From Ranitomeya imitator (taxonomy: Eukaryota), in NCBI RefSeq assembly GCF_032444005.1, contig NC_091291.1, positions 27,776,001-27,840,000 on the forward strand: a DNA stretch of 64,000 bases, given 5' to 3'. Of the stretch, positions 1,105 through 64,000 are shown piece by piece. Made by a program: the position numbers and the translations under genes. A model generated the notes under the pieces. It worked only from the letters and a program-made list of their open reading frames with translations. It ran no database searches and had not been told where the DNA came from. Positions within the stretch are counted from its first letter, which is position 1, and every line of letters starts with the position of its first letter.

Positions 1105-1896
1105 TATATTACCTGTGTTTTATAACTATTGGACTTATTACTCGATAACATATGTGACTGATTATAATTCCTATAGACAAATTATGATGACTCTTCCATT
1201 GGGGAAATACCTCCATGATTAGGTGACTCTACCAGAACGGAAAAACTCTTCCCTATTGACGTATGTTCCATTTGTTTCTTTTTCACCTAGATCATTTTGT
1301 ACTTAAATGGACCTAAACCTATGACCTTTAATATCCAAAAGGCTTTGTTCACACAAGTGTTTTTGCTTTACGCACAGTAGTCAACCAATATCAATCAATG
1401 AGCTAATTTTACGGTTTGTGTAGAATGCATTCTTCTCTTCCGTTTTTCTGATGAAACTCAACAATCAAATTCGAGAGGTGGTTTTCAAAATATGGATCCA
1501 GTACTGATACCGTCCATAAAAATTTAACTTTGAATCTAAAGATTACATAGAAAAATTAATAGTGCTTTTTGGTTTTTTTTTTGTGATTGGAGAGAACGGA
1601 TGACAAGAAGAGTGGATGGATAGAACACCACATGGAGGACAAAAAATATCTGTGGGTGAAATGGATGAAAAATTAGTTATTTTTCATACACTCGTCTGAA
1701 ATTTGCTCAAAGCCTCAATAATTTTTCACTTTTTCCAAATTTTTCACTTTTTTATTTTATCAGTGAGCTGGATTCATTTATCAGCCACTTTTTCTCCATG
1801 TGTCAGTTTTTTTTTATCATCTATGTGTCACCAGTGTTTTGCATATGCAAAAATAAATAAAAATGATGGAAGTTTCCCAAGTTTCTCCTTTCATTC

Positions 1897-1985
1897 AAGG
1901 GGTAACGTTTCTACTTATGGAGAGTGTCATGCCTGGCATGTCAGAGTAACAAGGCTTATAAGCCATGCAACGCTCCTCGGGAAAC
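1897..1985. repeat. Relic related to the left end of the hammerhead-bearing element at 63.4 kb
   Basis: 1897-1923 AAGGGGTAACGTTTCTACTTATGGAGA matches 63430-63456 at 24 of 27 positions; no hammerhead core seen here. Confidence 0.6.
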
Positions 1986-2584
1986 GCGCATTCAGACATC
2001 TGTGATTCACATATGTACTATGTCCATTTTTTCCATTATGCTTGGTTGTTTTCAAGGCTGGGTTTCTATTGCATACACAGTGTCCGCGGAAAAATCTCGA
2101 AGAGGTCCATTTTTGATCGGAGTCACAAAATTGTGCATTCAAGTCAATGGCTCCATCAAAATCATAGAAAGCAGAACACAGATGCCATCTTTTTGCAATT
2201 CGCGCACCGTCCGTTTTCAACATCGTAATTGGTAGAAGTTTTATAATTGTGTGCGGCCAATGAAAAATACGGACCAAACACGTACAAGAATAAACTGACT
2301 TCTGAATGAGTCCTTAGGGTATCGATTCTTGGATTAACGTACCACCAAGTGTGCATGTTTTCATCCTCTCTGGTCTGTATTTTTTTATTGAGTCTTTTTT
2401 TAATCATTTTTCAATGACACCGTAAATGTAAAATTTGCGTTTGTCCACAAGAGGGAGAGAAAGACTAAAGCATCGCTCAATGAAATCCTCAAAGCTGGGA
2501 ATGAAGTTGTATCTGCTCAGTCTTTTTGCACCATCTTCTTCAACATTTCTAGAAATGTCGTTAGGAGAACTTCTTGATTCCATG

Positions 2585-2631
2585 TTGACCTTGACCCTAT
2601 GCTAAATTCAGGAGCTGTAACACCTATTTAA
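2585..2631 (+). promoter_or_regulatory. Candidate nuclear-receptor direct repeat plus TATA-like box (possible APOC4 promoter)
   Basis: TTGACCTTGACCCT followed ~27 bp later by TATTTAA (2625-2631), mirroring TGGACTTGGACCCT...ATATAAC upstream of APOC2. Could instead belong to the CR1 5' UTR. Confidence 0.35.
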
Positions 2632-2712
2632 CACATTATTGCAAGAGAGCTTGGCTGAGTAGATTACACAAGAAGGAAAACACACAGCAAGTCAGCAGGA
2701 TCTAGGAGCAAC

Positions 2713-3666
2713 ATGGCAGAAGTGACAACCTACATGGTGAGCTGCAGCATGTGCTACATGTTCACAGATCGACCAGAAGAAGAATTAAATTTCACCTGTC
2801 AGAAGTGTAGACTAGTGGCCCTTTTAGAAGAAAAGGTGCGGGGTCTGGAAGAAAGAATAGCAACCTTGAAACTCATCAAAGAGAATGAAGACTTTCTAGA
2901 CAGAACAGAAGCATCTCTACTGGTCACAGAAGGTGAAAAAAGTGTCAGAGAACCTCCAAAAGCAGATGAGTGGAAGCATGTGACCAAAAGAAGCAAGAAG
3001 ACCATGGAGAAATCACCAACCACACAACTGAAGAACCGATATCAAATCTTTGTAGAGGATGAAGATGGCACACCTAAGGATGAAGCAATACCAGCAAGCA
3101 AAAAAGAAAAGGGCACACAGCAACAAGTGACAGCAAAAAGTACAGCCAAGAAGCAACGAAGAGTGGTGGTGGTGGGAGACTCACTACTGAGAGGCACAGA
3201 AGCAGCCATCTGCAGACCGGACATAACTGCAAGAGAAGTATGCTGCCTTCCAGGTGCGATGATCAAGGATGTGACCGATAGGATACCAAAGCTCTTCAAC
3301 TCCAAGGACGTCCACCCATTTCTTCTGATACATGTTGGCACCAATGACACAGCAAGGAAGGACCTACCGACAATCTGCAAAGACTTTGAAGAGTTGGGGA
3401 AGAAAGTAAAGGAAGTGGATGCACAGGTAGTTTTTTCTTCTATCCTTCCAGTAGACGGGCATGGCACCAGGAGATGGAACAGGATCCTTGATGCAAACAA
3501 CTGGCTAAGACGATGGTGCAGACAACAAGGATTCGGATTCCTGGACCACGGTGTGAATTACTTGTACGATGGACTCCTCGCCAGAGACGGACTACACCTC
3601 AACAAACCTGGGAAACACACATTCGCCAGAAGACTCGCTACACTCATCAGGAGGGCGTTAAACTAG
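2713..3666 (+). CDS. CR1 ORF1p (zinc finger, coiled coil, SGNH/GDSL esterase domain)
   Basis: CSMC...CQKC, heptad region, VVVGDSLLRG, HVGTND and DGLHLN motifs. Confidence 0.93.
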   Translation: MAEVTTYMVSCSMCYMFTDRPEEELNFTCQKCRLVALLEEKVRGLEERIATLKLIKENEDFLDRTEASLLVTEGEKSVREPPKADEWKHVTKRSKKTMEKSPTTQLKNRYQIFVEDEDGTPKDEAIPASKKEKGTQQQVTAKSTAKKQRRVVVVGDSLLRGTEAAICRPDITAREVCCLPGAMIKDVTDRIPKLFNSKDVHPFLLIHVGTNDTARKDLPTICKDFEELGKKVKEVDAQVVFSSILPVDGHGTRRWNRILDANNWLRRWCRQQGFGFLDHGVNYLYDGLLARDGLHLNKPGKHTFARRLATLIRRALN

Positions 3667-6581
3667 AAGAAGAGGGGACGGGAAGAAAAACATTAGACTT
3701 GAACAAAGAAGATCCAGGAAAACATACTCAGAAGGGAGGTAAGAACATTTCTAAAACAATCCACAGCGAGGAGATTGGAACAAAACAAAATCCTCTAAAC
3801 TGCATGCTTGCAAACGCCAGAAGCCTGACAAACAAGATGGAAGAACTAGAAGCAGAAATATCTACAGGTAACTTTGACATAGTGGGAATAACCGAGACAT
3901 GGTTAGATGAAAGCTATGACTGGGCAGTTAACTTACAGGGTTACAGTCTGTTTAGAAAGGATCGTAAAAATCGGAGAGGAGGAGGGGTTTGTCTCTATGT
4001 AAGGTCTTGTCTAAAGTCCACTTTAAGGGAGGATATTAGCGAAGGAAATGAGGATGTCGAGTCCATATGGGTCGAAATTCATGGAGGGGAAAATGGTAAC
4101 AAAATTCTCATTGGGGTCTGTTACAAACCCCCAAATATAACAGAAACCATGGAAAGTCTACTTCTAAAGCAGATAGATGAAGCTGCAACCCATAATGAGG
4201 TCCTGGTTATGGGGGACTTTAACTACCCGGATATTAACTGGGAAACAGAAACCTGTGAAACCCATAAAGGCAACAGGTTTCTGCTAATAACCAAGAAAAA
4301 TTATCTTTCACAATTGGTGCAGAATCCAACCAGAGGAGCAGCACTTTTAGACCTAATACTATCTAATAGACCTGACAGAATAACAAATCTGCAGGTGGTC
4401 GGGCATCTAGGAAATAGCGACCACAATATTGTACAGTTTCACCTGTCTTTCACTAGGGGGACTTGTCAGGGAGTCACAAAAACACTGAACTTTAGGAAGG
4501 CAAAGTTTGACCAGCTTAGAGATGCCCTTAATCTGGTAGACTGGGACAATATCCTCATAAATAAAAATACAGATAATAAATGGAAAATGTTTAAGAACAT
4601 CCTAAATAGGCAGTGTAAGCGGTTTATACCTTGTGGGAATAAAAGGACTAGAAATAGGAAAAACCCAATGTGGCTAAACAAAGAAGTAAGACAGGCAATT
4701 AACAGTAAAAAGAAAGCATTTGCACTACTAAAGCAGGATGGCACCATTGAAGCTCTAAAAAACTATAGGGAGAAAAATACTTTATCTAAAAAACTAATTA
4801 AAGCTGCCAAAAAGGAAACAGAGAAGCACATTGCTAAGGAGAGTAAAACTAATCCCAAACTGTTCTTCAACTATATCAATAGTAAAAGAATAAAAACTGA
4901 AAATGTAGGTCCCTTAAAAAATAGTGAGGAAAGAATGGTTGTAGATGACGAGGAAAAAGCTAACATATTAAACACCTTCTTCTCCACGGTATTCACGGTG
5001 GAAAATGAAATGCTAGGTGAAATCCCAAGAAACAATGAAAACCCTATATTAAGGGTCACCAATCTAACCCAAGAAGAGGTGCGAAACCGGCTAAATAAGA
5101 TTAAAATAGATAAATCTCCGGGTCCGGATGGCATACACCCACGAGTACTAAGAGAACTAAGTAATGTAATAGATAAACCATTATTTCTTATTTTTAGGGA
5201 CTCTATAGCGACAGGGTCTGTTCCGCAGGATTGGCGCATAGCAAATGTGGTGCCAATATTCAAAAAGGGCTCTAAAAGTGAACCTGGAAATTATAGGCCA
5301 GTAAGTCTAACCTCTATTGTTGGTAAAATATTTGAAGGGTTTCTGAGGGATGTTATTCTGGATTATCTCAATGAGAATAACTGTTTAACTCCATATCAGC
5401 ATGGGTTTATGAGAAATCGCTCCTGTCAAACCAATCTAATCAGCTTTTATGAAGAGGTAAGCTATAGACTGGACCACGGTGAGTCATTGGACGTGGTATA
5501 TCTCGATTTTTCCAAAGCGTTTGATACCGTGCCGCACAAGAGGTTGGTAGACAAAATGAGAATGCTTGGTCTGGGGGAAAATGTGTGTAAATGGGTTAGT
5601 AACTGGCTTAGTGATAGAAAGCAGAGGGTGGTTATAAATGGTATTGTCTCTAACTGGGTCGCTGTGACCAGTGGGGTACCGCAGGGGTCAGTATTGGGAC
5701 CTGTTCTCTTCAACATATTCATTAATGATCTGGTAGAAGGTTTACACAGTAAAATATCGATATTTGCAGATGATACAAAACTATGTAAAGCAGTTAATAC
5801 AAGAGAAGATAGTATTCTGCTACAGATGGATCTGGATAAGTTGGAAACTTGGGCTGAAAGGTGGCAGATGAGGTTTAACAATGATAAATGTAAGGTTATA
5901 CACATGGGAAGAGGGAATCAATATCACCATTACACACTGAATGGGAAACCACTGGGTAAATCTGACAGGGAGAAGGACTTGGGGATCCTAGTTAATGATA
6001 AACTTACCTGGAGCAGCCAGTGCCAGGCAGCAGCTGCCAAGGCAAACAGGATCATGGGGTGCATTAAAAGAGGTCTGGATACACATGATGAGAGCATTAT
6101 ACTGCCTCTGTACAAATCCCTAGTTAGACCGCACATGGAGTACTGTGTCCAGTTTTGGGCACCGGTGCTCAGGAAGGATATAATGGAACTAGAGAGAGTA
6201 CAAAGGAGGGCAACAAAATTAATAAAGGGGATGGGAGAACTACAATACCCAGATAGATTAGCGAAATTAGGATTATTTAGTCTAGAAAAAAGACGACTGA
6301 GGGGCGATCTAATAACCATGTATAAGTATATAAGGGGACAATACAAATATCTCGCTGAGGATCTGTTTATACCAAGGAAGGTGACGGGCACAAGGGGGCA
6401 TTCTTTGCGTCTGGAGGAGAGAAGGTTTTTCCACCAACATAGAAGAGGATTCTTTACTGTTAGGGCAGTGAGAATCTGGAATTTCTTGCCTGAGGAGGTG
6501 GTGATGGCGAACTCAGTCGAGGGGTTCAAGAGAGGCCTGGATGTCTTCCTGGAGCAGAACAATATTGTATCATACAATTAG
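3513..6581 (+). CDS. CR1 ORF2p (APE endonuclease plus reverse transcriptase); true start probably downstream of 3513
   Basis: NARSL, GITETW, GDFNYP, SDH, YRPVSLTS, YLDFSKAFD, GVPQGSVLGP and FADD motifs in an uninterrupted 1022-codon frame. Confidence 0.96.
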   Translation: MVQTTRIRIPGPRCELLVRWTPRQRRTTPQQTWETHIRQKTRYTHQEGVKLEEEGTGRKTLDLNKEDPGKHTQKGGKNISKTIHSEEIGTKQNPLNCMLANARSLTNKMEELEAEISTGNFDIVGITETWLDESYDWAVNLQGYSLFRKDRKNRRGGGVCLYVRSCLKSTLREDISEGNEDVESIWVEIHGGENGNKILIGVCYKPPNITETMESLLLKQIDEAATHNEVLVMGDFNYPDINWETETCETHKGNRFLLITKKNYLSQLVQNPTRGAALLDLILSNRPDRITNLQVVGHLGNSDHNIVQFHLSFTRGTCQGVTKTLNFRKAKFDQLRDALNLVDWDNILINKNTDNKWKMFKNILNRQCKRFIPCGNKRTRNRKNPMWLNKEVRQAINSKKKAFALLKQDGTIEALKNYREKNTLSKKLIKAAKKETEKHIAKESKTNPKLFFNYINSKRIKTENVGPLKNSEERMVVDDEEKANILNTFFSTVFTVENEMLGEIPRNNENPILRVTNLTQEEVRNRLNKIKIDKSPGPDGIHPRVLRELSNVIDKPLFLIFRDSIATGSVPQDWRIANVVPIFKKGSKSEPGNYRPVSLTSIVGKIFEGFLRDVILDYLNENNCLTPYQHGFMRNRSCQTNLISFYEEVSYRLDHGESLDVVYLDFSKAFDTVPHKRLVDKMRMLGLGENVCKWVSNWLSDRKQRVVINGIVSNWVAVTSGVPQGSVLGPVLFNIFINDLVEGLHSKISIFADDTKLCKAVNTREDSILLQMDLDKLETWAERWQMRFNNDKCKVIHMGRGNQYHHYTLNGKPLGKSDREKDLGILVNDKLTWSSQCQAAAAKANRIMGCIKRGLDTHDESIILPLYKSLVRPHMEYCVQFWAPVLRKDIMELERVQRRATKLIKGMGELQYPDRLAKLGLFSLEKRRLRGDLITMYKYIRGQYKYLAEDLFIPRKVTGTRGHSLRLEERRFFHQHRRGFFTVRAVRIWNFLPEEVVMANSVEGFKRGLDVFLEQNNIVSYN

Positions 6582-6726
6582 GTTCTGTAGAAGGATGTAG
6601 ATCTGGGGATTTATTATGATGGAATATAGGCTGAACTGGATGGACAAATGTCTTTTTTCGGCCTTACTAACTATGTTACTATGTTACTATGTTACTATGT
6701 TACCTATGTAAAACTATGAGCTAGAA

Positions 6727-6912
6727 CAGTGTTCCCCAAGTTCGGTCCTCAAGAGCCACCAACAGGTCATGTTTTCAGGATTTCCTTAGTATTGCCCAGG
6801 TGAGAATTCCATCATCTAGACAGGCAACAATTCCATCACCTGAGCCATTCTAAGGAAATCCTGAAAACACGACCTGTTGGTGGCTCTTGAGGCCTGGAGT
6901 TGGGGAACACTG
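6727..6912. mobile_element. hAT-type MITE
   Basis: TIRs CAGTGTTCCCCA / TGGGGAACACTG and an exact 8-bp target duplication AGCTAGAA (6719-6726 and 6913-6920). Confidence 0.92.
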
Positions 6913-7317
6913 AGCTAGAAGAACAAGATAAGTGACTACCATGGGTCATAGCGAAGAGAGAAGTCAATCTGGCATCTGTCTGAAGTCCCCCATACCAGGA
7001 GAATGACAGCTAACCATTCTTGACCATCTGTATTTTCTTGAACTGTTTTGGATTAACTTTAGAAACTTTTTTTGGAGGATTAGCAAAGTGTCTAAATCTT
7101 CAACCAATTGCTTGGTGTACGGGACCAAACTAAATCATCTTTACTAGAAATATGTCATGGTTTAGTCTACATTTTTTGGACTTTCCTGATCTTATTACAA
7201 ATGCGGAATATCTTTGATATCAACTTTTTTCTTTCCTAGTTTTGGTAAAAACAAAAACTTTTCTTGGCCTTTTCTTTCTCTTGACCGAATTTCTACTTTT
7301 GTCTACTAGGTGAAACA

Positions 7318-29059: not shown

Positions 29060-31380
29060 TGATGGAAGGTCAATCATCCTTCGGGACTTATGTCTACTAG
29101 AGCAGGGGTCCCCAACTCCAGTCCTCAAGGCCCACCAACATGTCATGTTTTCAGGATTTCCTTAGTCTTGCCCAGGTAATAATTGCATCACTTGTGCAAT
29201 GCAAAGGAAATCCTGAAAACATGACCTGTTGGTGGGCCTTGAGGACTGGAGTTGGACTAGAGGATGGATCATCCTTGGGGTTTATGTCTACTAGAGGGTG
29301 AATTAGCCTTCGGGACTTACGTCTACTACAGGGTGAATCATCCTTTGGGAAAAAAGTCTACTAGAGGGTGGATCATCCTTTGGAACTTACGTTTACTGGA
29401 AGGTGAATCATCCTTCGGGACTTACTTCTACTAGAGGTTGAATCATTCTTAGAGACTTACTTTTTCTACACGGTTAATCATCCTTTGGGAATTACGTCTC
29501 CTAGAGGGTGAATCATCCTTTGGGACTTACTTGTACTAGAGGTTGAATCATTCTTTGGGACTTGTTTCTAGTAGAGGGTTAATCATCCTTCAGAAATTAC
29601 GTGTACTAGAGGGTGAATCATCCTTTGGGAAAAAAAGTCTACTAGAGGGTGGATCATTCTTTGGAACTTACGTTTACTAGAATGTGAATCATTCTTTGGG
29701 ACTTACCTCTCCTAGAGGTTGAATCACTCTACGGGACTTACTTTTTCTTCAGGATTAATCATCTTTTGGGAAAAAAGTCTACTAGAGGGTGGATCATCCT
29801 TTGGAACTTACGTTTACTAGAGGGTGGATCATCCTTCCGAATTTATGTTTTCTAGAGGGTGAATTATCCTTTGGGACTTACTTGTACTAGAGGTTGAATC
29901 ATTCTTTGGGACTTGTTTCTAGTAGAGGGTTAATCATCCTTCAGAAATTACGTGTACTATAGTGTGAATCATCCTTTGGGAAAAAAGTCTACTAGAGGGT
30001 GGATCATTCTTTGGAACTTACGTTTACTAGAATGTGAATCATTCTTTGGGACTTACTTCTACTATAGGTTGAATCACTCTTCGGGACTTACTTTTTCTTC
30101 AGGATTAATCATCTTTTGGGAATTACATCTACTAGAGGGTGGATCATCCTTTGGAACTTACGTTTACTAGAGGGTGGATCATCCTTCCGAATTTATGTTT
30201 TCTAGAGGGTGAATCATCCTTTGGGACTTACTTGTACTAGAGGTTGAATCATTCTTTGGGACTTGTTTCTAGTAGAGGGTTAATCATCCTTCAGAAATTA
30301 CGTGTACTATAGTGTGAATCATCCTTTGGGAAAAAAGTCTACTAGAGGGTGGATCATTCTTTGGAACTTACGTTTACTAGAATGTGAATCATTCTTTGGG
30401 ACTTACTTCTACTATAGGTTGAATCACTCTTCGGGACTTACTTTTTCTTCAGGATTAATCATCTTTTGGGAATTACATCTACTAGAGGGTGGATCATCCT
30501 TTGGAACTTACGTTTACTAGAGGGTGGATCATCCTTCCGAATTTATGTTTTCTAGAGGGTGAATCATCCTTTGGGACTTACTTGTACTAGAGGTTGAATC
30601 ATTCTTTGGGACTTGTTTCTAGTAGAGGGTTAATCATCCTTCAGAAATTACGTGTACTATAGTGTGAATCATCCTTTGGGAAAAAAGTCTACTAGAGGGT
30701 GGATCATTCTTTGGAACTTACGTTTACTAGAATGTGAATCATTCTTTGGGACTTACTTCTACTATAGGTTGAATCACTCTTCGGGACTTACTTTTTCTTC
30801 AGGATTAATCATCTTTTGGGAATTACATCTACTAGAGGGTGGATCATCCTTTGGAACTTACGTTTACTAGAGGGTGGATCATCCTTCCGAATTTATGTTT
30901 TCTAGAGGGTTAATCATCCTTTGGGACTTACTTGTACTAGAGGTTGAATCATTCTTTGGGACTTGTTTCTAGTAGAGGGTTAATCATCCTTCAGAAATTA
31001 TGTTTACAACAGGGTTAATCATCCTTCTGGACTTATGTTTACTAGAGTGTGAATCATCCTTCAGGACTTACTTCTACTAGAGGTTGAATCATTCGTTGGG
31101 ACTTGTTTCTAGTAGAGGGTTAATCATCCTTCAGAAATTACGTGTACTAGAGGGTGAATCATCCTTCAGGACTTACTTCTACTAGAGATTGAATCAACCT
31201 TTGGGAATTAAATCTACTAGAGGTTGAATCATCCTTTCGAACTTGCTTCTACCAGAGGGAGAATTATCCTTCAGAACTTACTTGTACTAGAACGGGAATC
31301 ATTCTTCGGGAATTACGTCTACTTTGTGATTTACATCTACCAGAGGGTGGATCATCCTTCAGGACATATGTCTTTTAGCT
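29060..31380 (+). repeat. 35-bp minisatellite with 350-bp higher-order repeat (protease intron 3)
   Basis: Unit ~CTACTAGAGGGTGAATCATCCTTTGGGACTTACGT; identical ORFs at 29952, 30302 and 30652 show the 350-bp period. Confidence 0.95.
29103..29255. mobile_element. hAT-type MITE of the same family as 6727-6912, right end truncated
   Basis: CAGGGGTCCCCAACTCCAGTCCTCAAG...CATGTTTTCAGGATTTCCTTAG; inserted within the 35-bp minisatellite. Confidence 0.85.
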
Positions 31381-36916: not shown

Positions 36917-38520
36917 CAGTGGGGCAAAAAAGTATTTAGTCAGTCAGCAATAGTGCAAGTTCCACCACTTAAAAAGATGAGAGGCGTCTGTAATTTACAT
37001 CATAGGTAGACCTCAACTATGGGAGACAAACTGAGAAAAAAAAATCCAGAAAATCACATTGTCTGTTTTTTTATCATTTTATTTGCATATTATGGTGGAA
37101 AATAAGTATTTGGTCAGAAACAAAATTTCATCTCAATACTTTGTAATATATCCTTTGTTGGCAATGACAGAGGTCAAACGTTTTCTGTAAGTCTTCACAA
37201 GGTTGCCACACACTGTTGTTGGTATGTTGGCCCATTCCTCCATGCAGATCTCCTCTAGAGCAGTGATGTTTTTGGCTTTTCGCTTGGCAACATGGACTTT
37301 CAACTCCCTCCAAAGGTTTTCTATAGGGTTGAGACGTGGAGACTGGCTAGGCCACTCCAGGACCTTGAAATGCTTCTTACGAAGCCACTCCTTCGTTGCC
37401 CTGGCGGTGTGCTTTGGATCATTGTCATGTTGAAAGACCAAGCCATGTTTCATCTTCAATGCCCTTGCTGATGGAAGGAGGTTTGCACTCAAAATCTCAC
37501 AATACATGGCCCCATTCATTCTTTCATGTACCCAGATCAGTCGTCCTGGCCCCTTTGCAGAGAAACAGCCCCAAAGCATGATGTTTCCACCACCATGCTT
37601 TACAGTAGGTATGGTGTTTGATGGATGCAACTCAGTATTCTTTTTCCTCCAAACATGACAAGTTGTGTTTCTACCAAACAGTTCCAGTTTGGTTTCATCA
37701 GACCATAGGACATTCTCCCAAAACTCCTCTGGATCATCCAAATGCTCTCTAGCAAACTTCAGACGGGCCCGGACATGTACTGGCTTAAGCAGTGGGACAC
37801 GTCTGGCACTGCAGGATCTGAGTCCATGGTGGCGTAGTGTGTTACTTATGGTAGGCCTTGTTACATTGGTCCCAGCTCTCTGCAGTTCATTCACTAGGTC
37901 CCCCAGCGTGGTTCTGGGATTTTTGCTCACCGTTCTTGTGATCATTCTGACCCCACGGGGTGGGATTTTGCGTGGAGCCCCAGATCGAGGGAGATTATCA
38001 GTGGTCTTGTATGTCTTCCATTTTCTAATTATTGCTCCCACTGTTGATTTCTTCACTCCAAGCTGGTTGGCTATTGCAGATTCAGTCTTCCCAGCCTGGT
38101 GCAGGGCTACAATTTTGTTTCTGGTGTCCTTTGACAGCTCTTTGGTCTTCACCATAGTGGAGTTTGGAGTCAGACTGTTTGAGGGTGTGCACAGGTGTCT
38201 TTTTATACTGATAACAAGTTTAAACAGGTGCCATTACTACAGGTAATGAGTGGAGGAAAGAGGAGACTCTTAAAGAAGACGTTACAGGTCTGTGAGAGCC
38301 AGAAATCTTGATTGTTTGCTTCTGACCAAATACTTATTTTCCACCATAATATGCAAAAAAAATGATAAAAAAACAGACAATGTGATTTTCTGGATTTTTT
38401 TTTTCTCAGTTTCTCTCCCATAGTTGAGGTCTACCTATGATGTAAATTACAGACGCCTCTCATCTTTTTAAGTGGTGGAACTTGCACTATAGCTAACTGA
38501 CTAAATACTTTTTTGCCCCA

Positions 38521-40218: not shown

Positions 40219-40220
40219 TA

Positions 40221-40420
40221 GGTGGTGATGGCGAACTCAGTCGAGGGGTTCAAGAGAGGCCTGGATGTCTTCCTGGAGCAGAACAATATTGTATCATACA
40301 ATTATTAGGTTCTGTAGAAGGACGTAGATCTGGGGATTTATTATGATGGAATATAGGCTGAACTGGATGGACAAATGTCTTTTTTCGGCCTTACTAACTA
40401 TGTTACTATGTTACTATGTT
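40221..40420 (+). mobile_element. 200-bp 3' copy of the full-length CR1 family
   Basis: Matches 6497-6700 except for one substitution and a 3-nt indel; AGATA on both sides (40216-40220 and 40421-40425). Confidence 0.93.
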
Positions 40421-41520
40421 AGATATAAATATATGGACTATTGAGCGCTACACGCACCGATTTGAGGTTTCCGGGTACCGGGAGTTGAGACTGGCTGCCA
40501 TAGAGGACCGGATACAGTGTGAAGTCAATTGCTCATCTCTTCAACTGGGCGTCACTCTGCTCATTGGGGCATCTCCTTGCCCAGTCCGACATTGCCCAAC
40601 CAGTGTCACATTGTCTAGAGATACCCAGTGGCGTCACTTGAGTCTTGTAGGCTCCAATGCAAAAGCTCCAACAGGGCCCATAATTATTGCAAGTCTTTTT
40701 ATATTGGCCAAGGAGGCCTTTAGGGTCCCCTAGGCTCCAGGGTCTGGGTTGATGGCAACCCCTACACCTATCATAGTTATGCCCCCGGAGATACATCCTA
40801 TTACTATGGATTACCCAATTGTCATACAATTCCAAGAGGAACGACACAATGTTGATCAAACATGAATTAGTATTAACACTGGTCTGCAAAAAGTTGCAAA
40901 ATTATCACTTGGCCCTGAGGACATGTTGTGACTGGTAGTTTTGAACCGGGAATAATAACTGATGTGAACAGTAACATTTCTGTAATGTAGCAGCCACTCT
41001 CCCATACAGGGCTGTGATGACACCGTCTGACACATCCACCACCCAAACACAACTTGATATCAGTCATCAGTTGGGTCACACCGTGAGAATTTTCTTTTGT
41101 AGCTTTTTCTCATTGCATTAATATGTAAAGTTCTGTTGTCATGTTTCTTTACTGTTCAGAGTTTATGACCTGAGAGTCATAACGAAAGGCTCGATTTAAG
41201 CATTAGCAGGTTCCCTAACTGCAGAAATATATACACTGACTACTTCCTGCGATACAGAATACATCATACAGTGCTGGATTGGCAAGAACTAGCCCTTTGT
41301 TTGACCATTTGAGTCCTACTAAGGGCCGGCAACAGGATCTTTGGGTAACAGAGTCTCACTGGACAACTCTTCGCTTTGATGTTTCCACCATTCCTCCCAA
41401 GTACTATAATTTTTCCTATTTTCCAGTTGCTAGAGCTGTATTTTTGAGTACGAGCTGTAGTTTTTAGCGTTACCAATTTGGGGTCCATACAACTGGATTG
41501 ATTCGCAAGACTCCAGTCCG

Positions 41521-47443: not shown

Positions 47444-48454
47444 TTACATAATTTTGGAGTATGAGCGATTAGTGTCACTTAAGACTGTCCCTTCCCTCGA
47501 GAGAACCACATTGGAGTTGATCACTTGGTCAGATATCCTTTTGAAAATCCTAAAAATTTCTTTTCGAAATTTAACCCCAACAAAGGCATAAATAATTGGG
47601 TTTATGCAAACATGAGATAGGCCCAAAGTCTCAGTAATCACCAAGCCGATGTCCAACATCTCTTCGAAATGGCAGCTCCGGGAGAAGTAGCCCATTCTTT
47701 GAAGAGTATCGATGAGCTGCAAAGATGTATATGGTGCCCAGCAGAAGAAGAAGACAAGTAGGAGAACGACAATTACTAACTGAGACCTTCTGGATTCGTT
47801 TAACCTGGACTCTTGAAGAGTGCAAAATATTCGAGAGTAGAAAAACAGCATAAAAATCAATGGGATAACGAAAGCAATAACAATTTTTGTAAGTTGTAAT
47901 GCAATCCTCAATGAGTTCGATTTTTCTGGGTCAAACTTGTAAATGCAGATTGTTGTGTGGGATAGCAGGTTTTCTCCAACGTCGCGAAAATAAAAGTCTT
48001 GCCAAGACAAAAAGCATGATAAACCCCAGACAAAAAGACAAATCATGATTGTGTGGATTGGCCGTTGCTTTTTATGAAGATCCATGGCATGGACGATGGA
48101 GAAATAGCGACTCAAACTAATAGCAACAAGGAGTAAAATGCTACTGTATATATTTATGGTGAACAAAGCTCCCAAAATCTTACAAGACACTTGACCAAAC
48201 AACCAACTGTAGCCATACTGGACGGCCCAAAATGGTAGAGTAAGACCAAGAAGAAGGTCAGACAAGGCCAACTGGAACAGATAGTGATCTGCTAGATGCC
48301 AGGAGGTTTGCCTGCTGATCAGTATGGTTAACACTAATCCATTTCCTATTAGATCCATGAGAAAAACAATCGCCAAGGCTGCCGGAACGAAGTATCCCAA
48401 AAACGACTCGGTTGGCTCACAAGCCGAGGTGTCCAAATTGGAGGGCGTAGGATC
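47444..48454 (-). CDS. CXCR3-like chemokine receptor, exon 2 (all seven TM helices)
   Basis: Acceptor GTGTCTCTAG| at 48454 in phase 0; GN, LALSD, TLPFW, SRYFSIVHA, CWAPY and NPIIYAFVGVKFR motifs. Which CXCR3 paralogue it is cannot be settled without a tree. Confidence 0.88.
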   Translation of the reverse strand, partial: DPTPSNLDTSACEPTESFLGYFVPAALAIVFLMDLIGNGLVLTILISRQTSWHLADHYLFQLALSDLLLGLTLPFWAVQYGYSWLFGQVSCKILGALFTINIYSSILLLVAISLSRYFSIVHAMDLHKKQRPIHTIMICLFVWGLSCFLSWQDFYFRDVGENLLSHTTICIYKFDPEKSNSLRIALQLTKIVIAFVIPLIFMLFFYSRIFCTLQESRLNESRRSQLVIVVLLLVFFFCWAPYTSLQLIDTLQRMGYFSRSCHFEEMLDIGLVITETLGLSHVCINPIIYAFVGVKFRKEIFRIFKRISDQVINSNVVLSREGTVLSDTNRSYSKIM

Positions 48455-55494: not shown

Positions 55495-57085
55495 CAGTGC
55501 CTTGTGAAAGTATTCGGCTCCCTGGAATGTTTCAACCTTTTCCCACATATCATGCTTCAAACCTAAAGATACCGAATGTAAATTTTTGGTGAAAAATCAA
55601 CAACAAGTGGAACACAATAGTGAAGTTGAACAAAATGTATTGGTTATTTTACATTTTTGTGGAAATTCAAAAACTGAAAAGTGAGGCGTGCAATATTATT
55701 CGGCCCCTTTACTTTCAGTGCAGAAGTTCATTGTGGATCTCTGAATGATCCAATGTTGTCCTAAATGCCTAATAATGATAAATATAATCCACCTGTGTGT
55801 AATCAAGTCTCCGTATAAATGCACCTGCTCTGTGATAGTCTCAGGGTTCTGTGTGAAGCACAGAGAGCATCATGAAGACCAAGGAACACAACAGGCAGGT
55901 CCGTGATACTGTTGTGGAGAAGTTTAAAGCCGGATTTGGATACAAAATGATTTCCAAAACTTTAAACATCCCAAGGAGCACTGTGCAAGCAATCATATTG
56001 AAATGGAAGGAGTATCATACCACTGCAAATCTACCAAGACCCGGCCGTCCCTCTAAACTTTCATCTCAAACAAGGAGAAGACTGATCAGAGATGCAGCCA
56101 AGAGGCCCATGATCACTCTGGATGAACTGCAGAGATCTACAGCTGAGGTGGGACAGTCTGTCCATAGGACAACACTCAGTCGTACACTGCACAAATCTGG
56201 CCTTTATGGAAAAGTGGCAAGAAGAAAGCATAAAAAGTGTAGTTTAAAGTTTGCAACAAGCCACTTGGGAGAAACACCAAACATGTGGAAGAAGGTGCTC
56301 TGGTCAGATGAAACCAAAATCGAACTTTTTGGCAACAATGACAAACGATATGTTTGGCGTAAAGGCAACACAGCTCATCACCCTGAACACACCATCCCCA
56401 CTGTCAAACATGGTGGTGGCAGCATCATGGTTTGGGCCTGCTATTCTTCAGCAGGGACAGGGAAGATGGTTAAAATTGATGGGAAGATGGATGGAGCCAA
56501 GTACAGGACCATTCTTGAAGAAAACCTGTTGGAGTCTGCAAAAAACCTGAGACTGGGACGGAGATTTGTCTTCCAACAAGGCAATGATCCCAAACATAAA
56601 GCAAAATCTACAATGGAATTGTTCCCTAATAAACGTATCCAGGTGTTAGAATGGCCAAGTCAGAGTCCAGACCTCAATCCAATCGAGAATCTGTGGAAAG
56701 AGCTGAAAACTGCTGTTCACAAACGATCTCCATCAACCTCACTGAGCTTGAGCTGTTTGCCAAGGAAGAATGGGCAAGAATTTCAGTCTCTCCATGTACA
56801 AAACTGATAGAGACATACCCCAAGCGACTTGTAATCGCAGCAAAAGGTGGCGCAACAAAGTATTACGATAAAAGGGTCGAATAATATTTCACGCCCCACT
56901 TTTCAGTTTTTGAATTTCCACAAAAGTTTAAAATAACCAATAAATTTCGTTCAACTTCACAACTGTGTTCCACTTGTTGTTGATTCTTCACCAAAAATTT
57001 ACATTTGGTATCTTTATGTTTGAAGCATGATATGTGGGAAAAGGTTGAAAAGTTCCAGGGGGCCGAATACTTTCGCAAGGCGCTG
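55495..57085 (+). mobile_element. Full-length but defective Tc1 element
   Basis: TA|CAGTGCCTTGTGAAAGTATTCGG ... CCGAATACTTTCGCAAGGCGCTG|TA. Confidence 0.95.
55872..56807 (+). pseudogene. Inactivated Tc1 transposase
   Basis: Second catalytic Asp replaced (QQGNDP), short deletion after ARRK, and a frameshift after HKRSPS. Confidence 0.85.
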
Positions 57086-61689: not shown

Positions 61690-63245
61690 ACATAGACACT
61701 CCCCAACTTGCCGCAGAGACCTGCCTCCCCTTCCTATAGAGAGACAAAGACCTGCCTCCCTTTTTCTGTAAGTAAACAAGGACCCACCTCCACTTCCCGT
61801 AGAGAGATATAGACTCGCTAACACTTCCTGTAGAGAGACAAATACCCACCTCCATTTTGTGTAAAGAAATGAAGACCTGCCTCCATTTACTGAGCAGAGA
61901 AAAAGTCCTGCCCCAGTTCCTGTATGGAGAGAAAAATGGGCCCCCATTTCCTACAGTGATACAAAAATCCTCCTCTACTCCAGGTAGACAAAGACCCCCC
62001 CCACTTCTTTTAAGGAGACAATGACCCACCTTCACTTCCTGTAGAATAACAAAGACGTGTCCCTACTTCCTGAAAAGAGACAAAGACCTGACCCCACTTC
62101 CTGTAAAGAGACAAAGACCTGACCCAACTTCCTGTAAAGAGACAAAGACCTGACCCCACTTCCCATAAAAGACAAAAATCTACGCTACTTTCTGTAAGAG
62201 ACAAAGACCTGCCCCCACTTCCCATAGAGAGACAAAGACCCATCTCTACTTCCTTTAGAGTGACAAATACCTTGCCCAACTTTCTGTATAGAGAAAAAGA
62301 CCCACTTCCACTTCCTGTAAAGAGACAAAGACCTGCCCCACTTCCTGTGGAGAGACAAAGATCTGCCCCCACTTCCCATAGAGAGACAAAGACCCATCTC
62401 TACTTTCTTTAGAGTGACAAAGACATTCCACAACTTTCTGTATAGAGACCCACTCCCACTTCCTGTAGAAACAAAGCCACCCCACTTTCTGTAGAGAGAC
62501 AAAGAACTGCGCAAACTTCCCGTTGAAAGACAAAGACCCGCCACCACTTTCTGGAGGTATACAAAGACCCCCCACTTCCTGTAGAAAAACGAAGACCACA
62601 CCCCATTTTCTGTGGAGAAACAAAAACCTGCCCCCACTTCCTGTATAGATACAAAGACCCCAACTTCCTGTTGCAAGATAAAGACCTGCCCCCACTTCCA
62701 GTAGAGAGACAAAGAACCCCCCCTTCTTGTAGAGAGATAAAGACCCCCACTTCAAATAAAGACCTGACCCCACTGTAAAGAGAAAAAGACCAGACCACAC
62801 TTCCTGTACAGAGACAAAGACCTGCCCATACTTCCTGTACAGAGACAAAGACCTGCCCACACTTCCTGTACAGAGACAAAGACCTGCCCACACTTCCTGT
62901 ACAGAGACAAAGACCTGCCCACACGTCCTGTACAGAGACAAAGACCTGCCGATACTTCCTGTACAGAGACAAAGACCTGCCCACACTTCCTGTACAGAGA
63001 CAAAGACCTGCCCACACTTCCTGTACAGAGACAAAGACCTGCCCACACTTCCTGTACAGAGACAAAGACCTGCCCCAACTTCCTGTAGGGAAACAAAGAC
63101 CTGCCCACACTTCCTGTACAGAGACAAAGACCTGCCCACACTTCCTGTACAGAGACAAAGACCTGCAACTTCCTGTAGGGAGATAAAGACCTGCCCCAAC
63201 TTCCTGTAGAGAAACAAAGACCTGCCCCCACTTCCTGTAGTCCAT
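61690..63245 (+). repeat. 31-bp minisatellite (~50 units, homogeneous at ~62790-63180)
   Basis: Unit AGAGACAAAGACCTGCCCACACTTCCTGTAC; accounts for the long repetitive minus-strand ORFs. Confidence 0.95.
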
Positions 63246-63427
63246 CTGTACGTCATGCTGCTTGACTTGTATTACATTTGACAACAGACAGTTACTCAGA
63301 AGGGAGACACCTAGTGTCACTTTAGAGTGATTTTTCATAGGTAAGACATACATTTTACGTAAAGTGGTTTGAAGATTCCAATTAAGTGGAAAAATAAAAT
63401 ATACCTGATTATGAACTTATACAAGAT

Positions 63428-63698
63428 ACAAGGGGTAAGGTTTCTCCTTGTGGAGAAGAGCTGGTTTGTCACTCTCCACAAGAGCCTCTCACCTAGCCAA
63501 ATCAGTTCTCATACTTCGCACTGACGAGGGCCAACAGCCCGAAACACCGTGTCTGCGAATTGAGATACTGATTTGGCTTTTATCCTAAGTCCTATTGCAC
63601 GACTCGTTAAAGAGTTGATTGTGACTTGTAGGATCGCTACTTCCAACAGGTGGCACTAGAGAGTTCAAGTCCTCTTTTTCTCTGAAGAGGCAATTTGC
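63428..63698 (+). mobile_element. Satellite-2/retrozyme-like monomer
   Basis: Flanked by ATACAAGAT direct repeats (63419-63427 and 63699-63707); contains a hammerhead, a CTCF-like site (63643-63659) and the octamer ATTTGCAT (63693-63700). Confidence 0.72.
63495..63578 (+). ncRNA. Type I hammerhead ribozyme
   Basis: Core CUGACGA (63521-27); stem II GGGC/GCCC with loop CAACA; GAAA (63541-44); stem III ACA/UGU; GUC cleavage after 63553; stem I UUCGCA/UGCGAA, UCUCA/UGAGA, AGCCAAAUCAGU/ACUGAUUUGGCU. Confidence 0.92.
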
Positions 63699-64000
63699 AT
63701 ACAAGATTCACTGAACTCAATAAGGGCTGTTAAACTATAAATCTTTTAACATAAATTATTACTATTTTCCCCACTAGAAAAACATATAAATGTACATGTA
63801 GGTGAGTGATTGACCCTGCAAAATTAATGCATAAAATTATACAGATATAAAAAAATATGTACTGAAAAGACGCTGGCATCAGGATGTAATTGTACATACT
63901 GCCATCTAGTGGTACAAGCACATCTTGCATTTTTTACATTGCTTGAGCTCATTATCCAGTTATTGCTTGCATTCCCAAAGCATCAACAGGAAAATAAATG

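What the first reader, a model, noticed from the sequence alone, without database searches (positions are those of the whole stretch)
63428..63698. Frog satellite-2/retrozyme-like element: complete hammerhead, snRNA-type promoter motifs and a 9-bp target duplication
Seen: a ~270-bp non-coding insert with ATACAAGAT on both sides, consistent with a target-site duplication from retrotransposition. It holds a type I hammerhead with every core nucleotide intact and a 23-bp bulged stem I. It also has the octamer ATTTGCAT at its 3' end and TCTCCTTGTG (63443-52) about 50-60 nt upstream of stem I. Known: newt satellite 2 and metazoan non-LTR retrozymes are small hammerhead-bearing monomers that spread via circular RNA; newt satellite 2 is reported to use an octamer plus PSE snRNA-type promoter. 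Inference: this is a circularly permuted monomer of an anuran counterpart, with the octamer belonging to the next unit's promoter. The resemblance to the Xenopus PSE core (recalled as TCTCCNNATG) needs checking.
Basis: partly seen in the sequence, partly recalled or inferred. Interest (0 to 1): 0.88.

Follow-up and report, generated by a model that had tools for sequence, protein, structure and literature searches.

The report
Solo frog hammerhead retroelement copy
This is one single-unit, slightly damaged copy of a very abundant small non-coding mobile element of frogs that carries a self-cutting hammerhead RNA motif, a kind already described in amphibians, so it is genuine but ordinary.

Summary
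The sequence features are real. A complete type I hammerhead lies at 63495-63578, with the cut predicted after C63553. Rfam Hammerhead_1 aligns end to end at 30.6 bits, just under its 34-bit cut-off. ATACAAGAT flanks the insert and occurs nowhere else in the window.

Contigs from four public runs show that 63484-63701 belongs to a huge dispersed family, on the order of 10^5 copies by a rough depth ratio. The family has one sharp 3' end, at 63699-63701, followed by unrelated AT-rich DNA. The first 55 bases are about 30 times rarer. This copy also lacks about 31 bases at 63482/63483 that complete a 27-bp 5' hairpin in fuller copies.

I read it as a monomeric, internally deleted, target-primed retro-insertion of a hammerhead-bearing non-autonomous element. 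That places it in the non-LTR retrozyme / Penelope-associated class described in frogs (Cervera and de la Pena 2020; Li et al. 2026).

The snRNA-promoter and circular-permutation reading is not supported. The PSE-like motif occurs at chance frequency, no well-supported head-to-tail junction appeared, and the octamer sits at the 3' tip of dispersed copies.

This scan has already reported hammerhead retroelement copies on other pieces of this genome. One loose end remains: the 5' 31 bases resemble the putative 5' end of a CR1-like LINE in the same window.

The parts
63419..63427 (.). Left copy of the direct repeat ATACAAGAT (target-site duplication)
   Evidence: The summed depth of repeated contigs starts to rise in the 63406-63431 bin.
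63428..63701 (+). The inserted element, 274 bp in this copy and about 305 bp in undeleted family members
   Evidence: Depth is 10^4-10^6 inside the element against about 10 in the flanks. Loose ends fall behind 63699, 63700 and 63701, with about 70% at 63701.
63430..63456 (+). 5' hairpin arm, a module of about 27-31 nt that also occurs at window 1893-1923
   Evidence: BLAST gave 27/31 identity, E 1e-4. Most family copies read the reverse complement of this arm just upstream of 63481 (table 7).
63443..63452 (+).
   Evidence: Present, but the pattern occurs at chance frequency. It is part of the hairpin arm.
63473..63482 (+). Remnant of the 3' hairpin arm, a 10-bp perfect inverted repeat of 63447-63456. 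The deletion point is between 63482 and 63483.
   Evidence: pair I2. table 5c: three contigs carry 31-39 extra letters between 63480/63482 and 63483.
63495..63578 (+). Extended type I hammerhead ribozyme. Predicted cleavage is between 63553 and 63554.
   Evidence: Rfam RF00163 matches 63515-63559 at 30.6 bits.
63693..63700 (+). Octamer ATTTGCAT inside the conserved 3' terminus of the family
63699..63707 (.). Right copy of ATACAAGAT. Its first 3 bases also match the family's 3' end.
1893..1923 (+). Look-alike of the element's 5' module, at the putative 5' end of a CR1-like LINE. Whether it belongs with this element is uncertain.

Best explanation
The insert at 63428-63701 is one monomeric copy of a very abundant, dispersed, non-coding retroelement family of this frog. 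Each unit carries a type I hammerhead ribozyme. [quoted passage not shown] 2026 derive from the terminal repeats of Penelope-like elements.

Inferred mechanism:
- A hammerhead-sense RNA was copied by a borrowed reverse transcriptase. Synthesis started at a fixed site, which gives the invariant 3' end ...TTTGCATA with no poly(A) or microsatellite tail. The primer was a nicked AT-rich target, which produced the 6-9 bp duplication.
- Most copies lack this copy's 5' end. This copy reached that 5' end, a hairpin, and later lost about 31 bp of the hairpin.
- The ribozyme core is intact. With a 3-bp helix III it should cut well only when paired with a second unit through the near-palindromic helix III. 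This lone copy is therefore probably inert, with no function at this locus.

Shown: the motif, the boundaries, the duplication, the dispersed family and the deletion. Inferred: which enzyme moved it, that the ribozyme depends on dimer formation, and that this copy is inert.
For: Hammerhead:
- All core nucleotides and three helices are present.
- The full-length Rfam RF00163 alignment scores 30.6 bits, E 1.5e-6.
- Helix I pair 63517-63557 varies in the family as C to T (about 13%) and G to A (9-14%). That would convert C-G to U-A. The partner changes at the same two CpGs are rarer: 63518 G to A at about 3%, and 63556 not listed (table 3).

Family:
- About 10,000 contigs per DNA run were laid.
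- Summed depth is 0.6-1.35 million over 63484-63691, against 8-14 for single-copy flank contigs (tables 1, 2, 8).
- Loose ends behind 63699-63701 have flank agreement of only 0.41-0.43, which indicates different insertion sites (table 7).

Strand: the 3' end is sharp and the 5' part is about 30 times rarer. This fits 5' truncation of a hammerhead-sense RNA (table 2).

Duplication: the 9-bp repeat abuts both family boundaries.

Deletion: three contigs carry 31-39 extra letters at 63480-63483. The upstream consensus in most copies is the reverse complement of the 5' arm (tables 5c, 7).

Helix III: the canonical fold is 3.3 kcal/mol above the minimum free energy fold. The helix III segment self-pairs at -7.4 kcal/mol.

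Literature:
- Amphibian type I hammerheads with a short helix III cleave as dimers, and they sit in non-LTR retrozymes with duplications longer than 4 bp (PMC7229834).
- Frog retrozyme families include dispersed monomers and are related to Penelope pLTRs (10.64898/2026.07.22.740005).
- A Penelope-like element starts reverse transcription at internal sites and cuts AT-rich DNA (PMC11167929).
Against: - No Penelope-like sequence could be compared, so the partner enzyme is inferred from the literature only.
- This copy is not tandem, and none of the 15 joints shown is a head-to-tail joint of this family. The defining tandem layout of an active retrozyme is therefore not met here.
- The Rfam score is below the gathering cut-off.
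- All four runs were contigs. Copy number is only an order-of-magnitude reading, the linkage of the two covarying positions was not seen, and RNA status is a guess.
- The 5' module shared with a CR1-like LINE is unexplained by this account.
Confidence: 0.75

Rival explanations
1. The element is a circularly permuted monomer of a tandem, satellite-2-like retrozyme. It is transcribed from an snRNA-type promoter, with the octamer at the end of one unit and the PSE at the start of the next, and it spreads through circular RNA.
For: A perfect octamer lies at the 3' tip with no listed variant of 10% or more across the family. A PSE-like decamer lies 16-25 nt from the 5' end. One contig in X2 joins a 3' region to an upstream region in head-to-tail order (table 5c, 63681 to 63492). 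An earlier scan note reports a 317-bp tandem hammerhead repeat in this genome.
Against: The PSE pattern occurs at chance frequency. It lies in the part held by about 3% of copies, and it is one arm of a hairpin. In undeleted copies it is 31 nt further from helix I. The family has fixed ends and diverse flanks, not permuted ends. In a tandem layout the octamer and the PSE would be only about 20 nt apart. Retro-copies include the PSE, whereas an upstream promoter element would not be transcribed.
Confidence: 0.08
2. The element is SINE-like and depends on the CR1-like LINE of the same genome. It would have borrowed the LINE's first ~30 nt, as a promoter or protein-binding module, to build its 5' hairpin.
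For: 27 of 31 bases are identical between 63426-63456 and 1893-1923, E 1e-4. The match lies about 790 bp upstream of ORF1 of a LINE with intact ORFs. It sits at a change from AT-rich simple sequence. Contigs in which the arm is followed by LINE-like letters occur in both DNA runs (table 5c).
Against: The LINE's true 5' end was not established. Stringent LINE-SINE pairs share 3' ends, and the element has neither the LINE's 3' UTR nor its (CTATGTTA)n tail. No tRNA-like head or Pol III boxes were found. Most family copies carry the module only in reverse orientation.
Confidence: 0.1
3. It is simply the terminal repeat (pLTR) left by a 5'-truncated autonomous Penelope-like element, not a separate non-autonomous family.
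For: Most Penelope insertions are 5' truncated and keep one terminal repeat with a hammerhead. The absence of a tail and the AT-rich target fit such an insertion.
Against: The depth profile is flat over 217 bp, and no listed contig continues upstream into coding sequence. No ORF start lies in the 3' 120 nt, whereas the one Penelope element studied in vitro ends inside its ORF. The apparent copy number is very high for truncated autonomous elements.
Confidence: 0.07

Closest known systems
Non-LTR retrozymes of amphibians (Cervera and de la Pena 2020, PMC7229834; Li, Clavereau and Pollet 2026, bioRxiv 10.64898/2026.07.22.740005)
   Same: A non-coding unit of about 300 nt with under 50% GC. It has a type I hammerhead with a short helix III, a target duplication longer than 4 bp and high copy number. 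Monomeric dispersed copies are described for frog families.
   Different: This copy is a single unit with fixed family ends, not a tandem array. The family seems mostly dispersed. It has a 5' hairpin and a terminal octamer that were not mentioned in the parts of those papers I read. Circular RNA was not shown here.
Hammerheads in the terminal repeats of Penelope-like elements (Cervera and de la Pena 2014, PMC4209133; Frangieh et al. 2024, PMC11167929)
   Same: A type I hammerhead apparently built to act as a dimer. It has no poly(A) tail, a fixed 3' end, an AT-rich target and widespread solo copies.
   Different: The Penelope motifs described are mostly minimal hammerheads with no helix III. 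This one is a canonical extended hammerhead with a 6-bp helix I and a loop 1. No reverse transcriptase gene is attached, and no sequence comparison with a pLTR was possible.
Newt satellite 2 (Epstein and Gall 1987; promoter: Coats et al. 1994, not readable here)
   Same: An amphibian repeat of about 300 bp with a type I hammerhead. The Rfam type I model aligns to this motif over its full length.
   Different: Helix II, loop 2 and helix III differ in sequence from the Rfam type I consensus. The element is dispersed, not a satellite. The snRNA-type promoter is not supported here.
Schistosome Sm-alpha hammerhead SINE (Ferbeyre et al. 1998; ribozyme architecture recalled from the Martick and Scott 2006 structure)
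   Same: A dispersed short retroelement carrying a type I hammerhead. From memory it has the same layout: a 6-bp helix I followed by a UAC/U internal loop.
   Different: Sm-alpha has a tRNA-like Pol III head. None is present here.

Membership tests
Hammerhead ribozyme, type I (Rfam RF00163) | Conserved core: CUGANGA, GAAA, and a cleavage-site triplet NUH ending in C17 | tested here: met
   CUGACGA at 63521-27, GAAA at 63541-44, GUC ending at 63553.
Hammerhead ribozyme, type I (Rfam RF00163) | Three helices around the core, with helix I open-ended | tested here: met
   Helix I is 23 bp, helix II 4 bp and helix III 3 bp, and every listed pair is a standard pair. The family variants at 63517 and 63557 would keep that pair.
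Hammerhead ribozyme, type I (Rfam RF00163) | Covariance-model score at or above the curated gathering score | tested here: inconclusive
   30.6 bits against 34. The alignment covers model positions 1-45 of 45, E 1.5e-6 in a 66-nt search. There was no hit in the whole-window or 431-nt searches.
Hammerhead ribozyme, type I (Rfam RF00163) | Self-cleavage | not testable with these tools
   This needs in vitro transcription of monomer and dimer constructs.
Non-LTR retrozyme | A non-coding unit of roughly 170-400 nt with a type I hammerhead | tested here: met
   The unit is 274 bp here and about 305 bp when undeleted. The longest ORF is 46 aa and has no relatives.
Non-LTR retrozyme | Tandem organisation: at least two consecutive units, each with a hammerhead (the criterion of Li et al. 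for an active element) | tested here: not met
   There is a single unit at this locus. None of the 15 joints shown is a head-to-tail joint of the family. In Li et al.'s terms this is a monomer derivative.
Non-LTR retrozyme | Target-site duplication longer than 4 bp | tested here: met
   6-9 bp.
Non-LTR retrozyme | Expression as linear and circular RNA | tested here: inconclusive
   Two runs guessed to be RNA hold family contigs, some embedded in longer contigs (table 8). Contigs cannot show circles or ends.
Non-LTR retrozyme | Sequence relation to a Penelope pLTR | not tested
   No Penelope sequence of this genome could be fetched.
Newt satellite 2 | Long tandem satellite arrays of about 330-bp units | tested here: not met
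   The family consists of dispersed copies with diverse flanks.
Newt satellite 2 | snRNA-type promoter (octamer plus PSE) driving the unit | tested here: inconclusive
   The octamer is present and no listed variant disrupts it. The PSE-like motif is at chance level and poorly placed. The reference paper is not held.
tRNA-derived SINE with a LINE-matched tail | A Pol III tRNA-like head, and a 3' end shared with a partner LINE | tested here: not met
   ARAGORN finds nothing. There is no similarity to the 3' end of the CR1-like LINE.

The most novel reading that the evidence does not exclude
The family may be a chimeric, SINE-like dispersed retrozyme of about 10^5 copies. Its full-length form would start with a 27-bp hairpin built from the first ~30 nt of a co-resident CR1-like LINE and end in a conserved Oct-1 octamer. 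That would be a hammerhead element that captured a LINE 5' module, as a promoter or protein-binding site, instead of the usual 3' tail. The octamer-bearing tip would serve as the fixed reverse-transcription start.
Probability: 0.12. Interest if true: 0.55.

Novelty: new member of a known kind. Interest (0 to 1): 0.25.

Why it matters
It is a clean example of a solo hammerhead retroelement in a frog, probably a poison frog. The ribozyme core is intact, both boundaries are defined and the target duplication is present.

The family-level data add three small points:
- In this species the family is mostly dispersed single units with one invariant 3' end.
- Fuller copies carry a 5' hairpin.
- One helix I pair changes in a compensatory way.

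These points bear on how retrozymes are copied, namely from a fixed internal start with 5' truncation. They do not change the known picture. The appealing snRNA-promoter link to newt satellite 2 does not hold on the evidence available.

Tried and rejected
- Rfam at gathering threshold on the whole window, and at E up to 10 on 431 nt, gave no hammerhead. Only a 66-nt search recovered it.
- I tried to fetch other copies and failed. The metagenome scan with the 25-nt core returned one unrelated soil contig. Two viral scans and one prokaryote-genome scan returned nothing.
- A spurious 45-aa ORF of the element used as bait found nothing in either protein library.
- The newt satellite 2 promoter paper is not held, so the PSE consensus stays unverified.
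- tRNA-like head: none. The T-arm-like stretch near 63660-63677 does not fit box A/B spacing, by my own reading.
- Similarity of the element's 3' end to the CR1 tail: none.
- 5' ends of copies piling up at the ribozyme cut site: no step in DNA depth after 63553 (table 2). The step seen in the two presumed RNA runs cannot be interpreted from contigs.

Full report
WHAT IS THERE

The hammerhead core is complete:
- CUGACGA at 63521-63527.
- A 4-bp helix II (63528-31 with 63537-40) closed by CAACA.
- GAAA at 63541-63544.
- A helix III of three pairs (63544-46 with 63550-52) around CCG.
- C17 at 63553, so the cut would fall between 63553 and 63554, as predicted.

Helix I is 6 bp, then a UAC/U internal loop, then 5 bp, a one-base bulge and 12 bp (63495-63520 with 63554-63578), 23 bp in all. 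A pattern scan of both strands of the window finds no other hammerhead.

Rfam gave nothing at the gathering threshold on the whole window, and nothing at E up to 10 on 431 nt. When only 63505-63570 was searched, Hammerhead_1 (RF00163) aligned over its whole model to 63515-63559. The score was 30.6 bits against a gathering score of 34, with E 1.5e-6. The motif is therefore a near-threshold but complete type I hammerhead, and the earlier blanks were filter losses.

THE DUPLICATION AND THE MOTIFS

ATACAAGAT occurs only twice in 64 kb, at 63419 and 63699.

The octamer ATTTGCAT is at 63693-63700. The window holds 8 such octamers against 4.05 expected, so alone it is weak evidence.

The PSE-like decamer is present at 63443-63452. 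However, TCTCCNNATG with at most one mismatch occurs 61 times in the window against 57.6 expected. The resemblance therefore carries no statistical weight. Three of those 61 hits lie in the element only because the decamer is part of an inverted repeat.

THE FAMILY

I laid contigs of four public runs on 63250-64000. Two runs are DNA, of organisms coded A and B. Two are guessed to be RNA.

- Run X2 (organism B) has a 481-nt contig identical to 63676-64000. It crosses the 3' junction, so B is the window's species or very close to it.
- Run X1 (organism A) has a 310-nt contig over 63250-63512 with 15 differences and 18 gapped positions. It crosses the 5' junction.
- The insertion is thus present in both. 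No empty site appeared among the joints shown.

Inside the element about 10,000 contigs per DNA run align. Summed depth is 0.6-1.35 million over 63484-63691, against 8-14 for the single-copy flank contigs. The tool warns that summed depth is not a copy number. I read it only as an order of magnitude, roughly 10^5 copies.

Three further points follow.

1. The 3' end is sharp. Loose ends start behind 63699 (82 and 90 contigs in the two DNA runs), 63700 (66 and 71) and 63701 (354 and 399). What follows agrees at only 0.41-0.43 and is AT-rich, meaning different insertion sites. The family therefore ends ...TTTGCATA at 63701, the octamer is wholly inside it, and the family is dispersed. In this copy the duplication is thus CAAGAT, plus three bases (ATA) that fit either the element or the target.

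2. The first 55 bases (63428-63483) are about 30 times rarer than the rest. Before 63481 most copies instead read a 30-nt consensus whose first 18 bases are the reverse complement of the motif near the 5' tip. Three contigs that do carry the 5' part have 31-39 extra letters between 63480/63482 and 63483. Fuller copies therefore have a 5' hairpin of about 27 bp. This copy has lost about 31 bp of it and keeps only a 10-bp inverted repeat, 63447-56 with 63473-82.

3. None of the 15 joints shown is the head-to-tail joint expected of tandem units or circles (57 more joints were not shown). Single contigs show odd junctions, one of them head-to-tail-like but lacking both termini.

A sharp 3' end together with an under-represented 5' end means the copied RNA was the hammerhead-sense strand.

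VARIATION IN THE FAMILY

This copy differs from the family majority at 63513, 63592, 63613, 63655 and 63659 (table 3). That is about 2% over 217 nt, in addition to the deletion. It is not a fresh insertion, which fits its presence in both organisms.

In helix I, 63517 C to T (about 13% in both DNA runs) and its partner 63557 G to A (14% and 9%) would turn C-G into U-A. Both positions are in CpGs. However, the opposite-strand changes at the same CpGs are much rarer: 63518 at 3%, and 63556 not listed. The pattern looks compensatory and not like plain CpG decay. Linkage on single copies could not be seen. No core nucleotide shows a variant reaching 10% in the DNA runs, but given the density of variable sites elsewhere this is not significant on its own.

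HOW IT PROBABLY WORKS

Published work covers several of the steps.
- Amphibian type I hammerheads with a short helix III cleave poorly alone and well as dimers, and they sit in non-LTR retrozymes whose RNAs are linear and circular (PMC7229834).
- Frog retrozyme families range from all-tandem to all-monomer. Monomers are spread evenly along chromosomes, and the families are sisters of Penelope terminal repeats (bioRxiv 10.64898/2026.07.22.740005). Only one of nine Xenopus dimers tested cleaved in vitro.
- A Penelope-like enzyme starts reverse transcription at fixed internal sites of its RNA and cuts AT-rich DNA (PMC11167929).

The features seen here are a fixed tail-less 3' end, graded loss of the 5' end, an AT-rich target and a 6-9 bp duplication. 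They fit target-primed copying by such an enzyme. That step is inferred, because I could not obtain any Penelope sequence of this genome.

In this copy the canonical hammerhead fold (-34.6 kcal/mol) is 3.3 kcal/mol above the minimum free energy fold, in which core bases pair with helix III bases. The nine-base helix III segment is a near-palindrome that self-pairs at -7.4 kcal/mol. A lone unit would then rarely cut, and I take this copy to be inert.

THE PROMOTER IDEA

An upstream snRNA-type promoter would not be carried in the transcript, yet retro-copies include the decamer. The decamer is in the part held by about 3% of copies. In undeleted copies it is 31 nt further from helix I than in this copy. 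In a tandem layout the octamer and the decamer would be only about 20 nt apart. The octamer shows no listed variant across the family, but its place at the very tip suggests a role in the start of copying at least as much as a role in transcription.

AN UNEXPLAINED LINK

The 5' module (63426-63456) matches 1893-1923 at 27 of 31 bases, E 1e-4. That site lies about 790 bp upstream of ORF1 of a CR1-like LINE with intact ORFs:
- ORF1 has an esterase fold.
- ORF2 has endonuclease and reverse transcriptase domains.
- The tail is (CTATGTTA)n.

The match sits at a change from AT-rich simple sequence. Contigs in which the arm is followed by LINE-like letters occur in both DNA runs (table 5c). Whether 1893 is the LINE's true 5' end is not established. 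The 3' ends of the LINE and the element are unrelated. I list a LINE-linked chimeric element as a rival and as the most novel reading, at about 10-12%.

CONTEXT AND VERDICT

A Tc1 transposase of the window is 96% identical to Ranitomeya imitator proteins, and earlier notes of this scan call the genome a poison frog. The scan has already reported many hammerhead retroelement copies on other pieces of this genome. They include 384-bp, 353-bp and 317-bp tandem units, fold-back copies and solo copies. I did not see those sequences and cannot say whether any belongs to the same family.

The finding is real and well read at the sequence level. It is a new member of a known kind, a solo and internally deleted copy, and its promoter interpretation is not supported.

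Noticed in passing
window 1893-6712: An apparently full-length CR1-like LINE on the + strand. ORF1 (2713-3666) has a GDSL esterase fold. ORF2 (3513-6581) has endonuclease and reverse transcriptase domains. The tail is (CTATGTTA)n near 6670-6710. A 202-bp 3' fragment that is 98% identical lies at 40220-40421, so the family is young.
   Followed up: partly
window 61717-63240: A minisatellite of a 31-bp unit, about 50 copies at 72% matches, ends 190 bp upstream of the element. The long minus-strand ORFs listed at 62185-63353 lie in it and are probably artefacts of the repeat.
   Followed up: partly
window 37133-38155 (-) and 55872-56807 (+): Two Tc1/mariner (Sleeping Beauty-type) transposase ORFs that look intact. 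The first is 96% identical to Ranitomeya imitator proteins and 85-88% identical to many fish copies.
   Followed up: partly
window 47444-48436 (-): An intron-less rhodopsin-family receptor ORF of 330 aa (Pfam 7tm_1, E 1e-54).
   Followed up: no
window 6721-6918, also 29097-29255: A palindromic short repeat of about 200 bp, with arms 87% alike, lies directly after the LINE tail and is repeated at 29.1 kb. It looks like a MITE.
   Followed up: no
L001 797-840 (-), soil metagenome contig Ga0307474_10214395: An unrelated contig carries a type I hammerhead with the same 25-nt core, helix II and loop 2, and a perfect 8-nt palindromic helix III (RF00163, 31.2 bits). A stretch that reads like a tRNA precedes it, though ARAGORN calls none. 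Telomere-like CCCTAA-type repeats lie nearby. This ribozyme module is therefore not frog-specific.
   Followed up: partly
window 63536-63587, runs X14 and X25: In the two runs guessed to be RNA, summed depth rises two- to three-fold just after the predicted cut site and keeps rising towards the 3' end. The DNA runs are flat there. Contig depths cannot settle whether this reflects cleavage.
   Followed up: no
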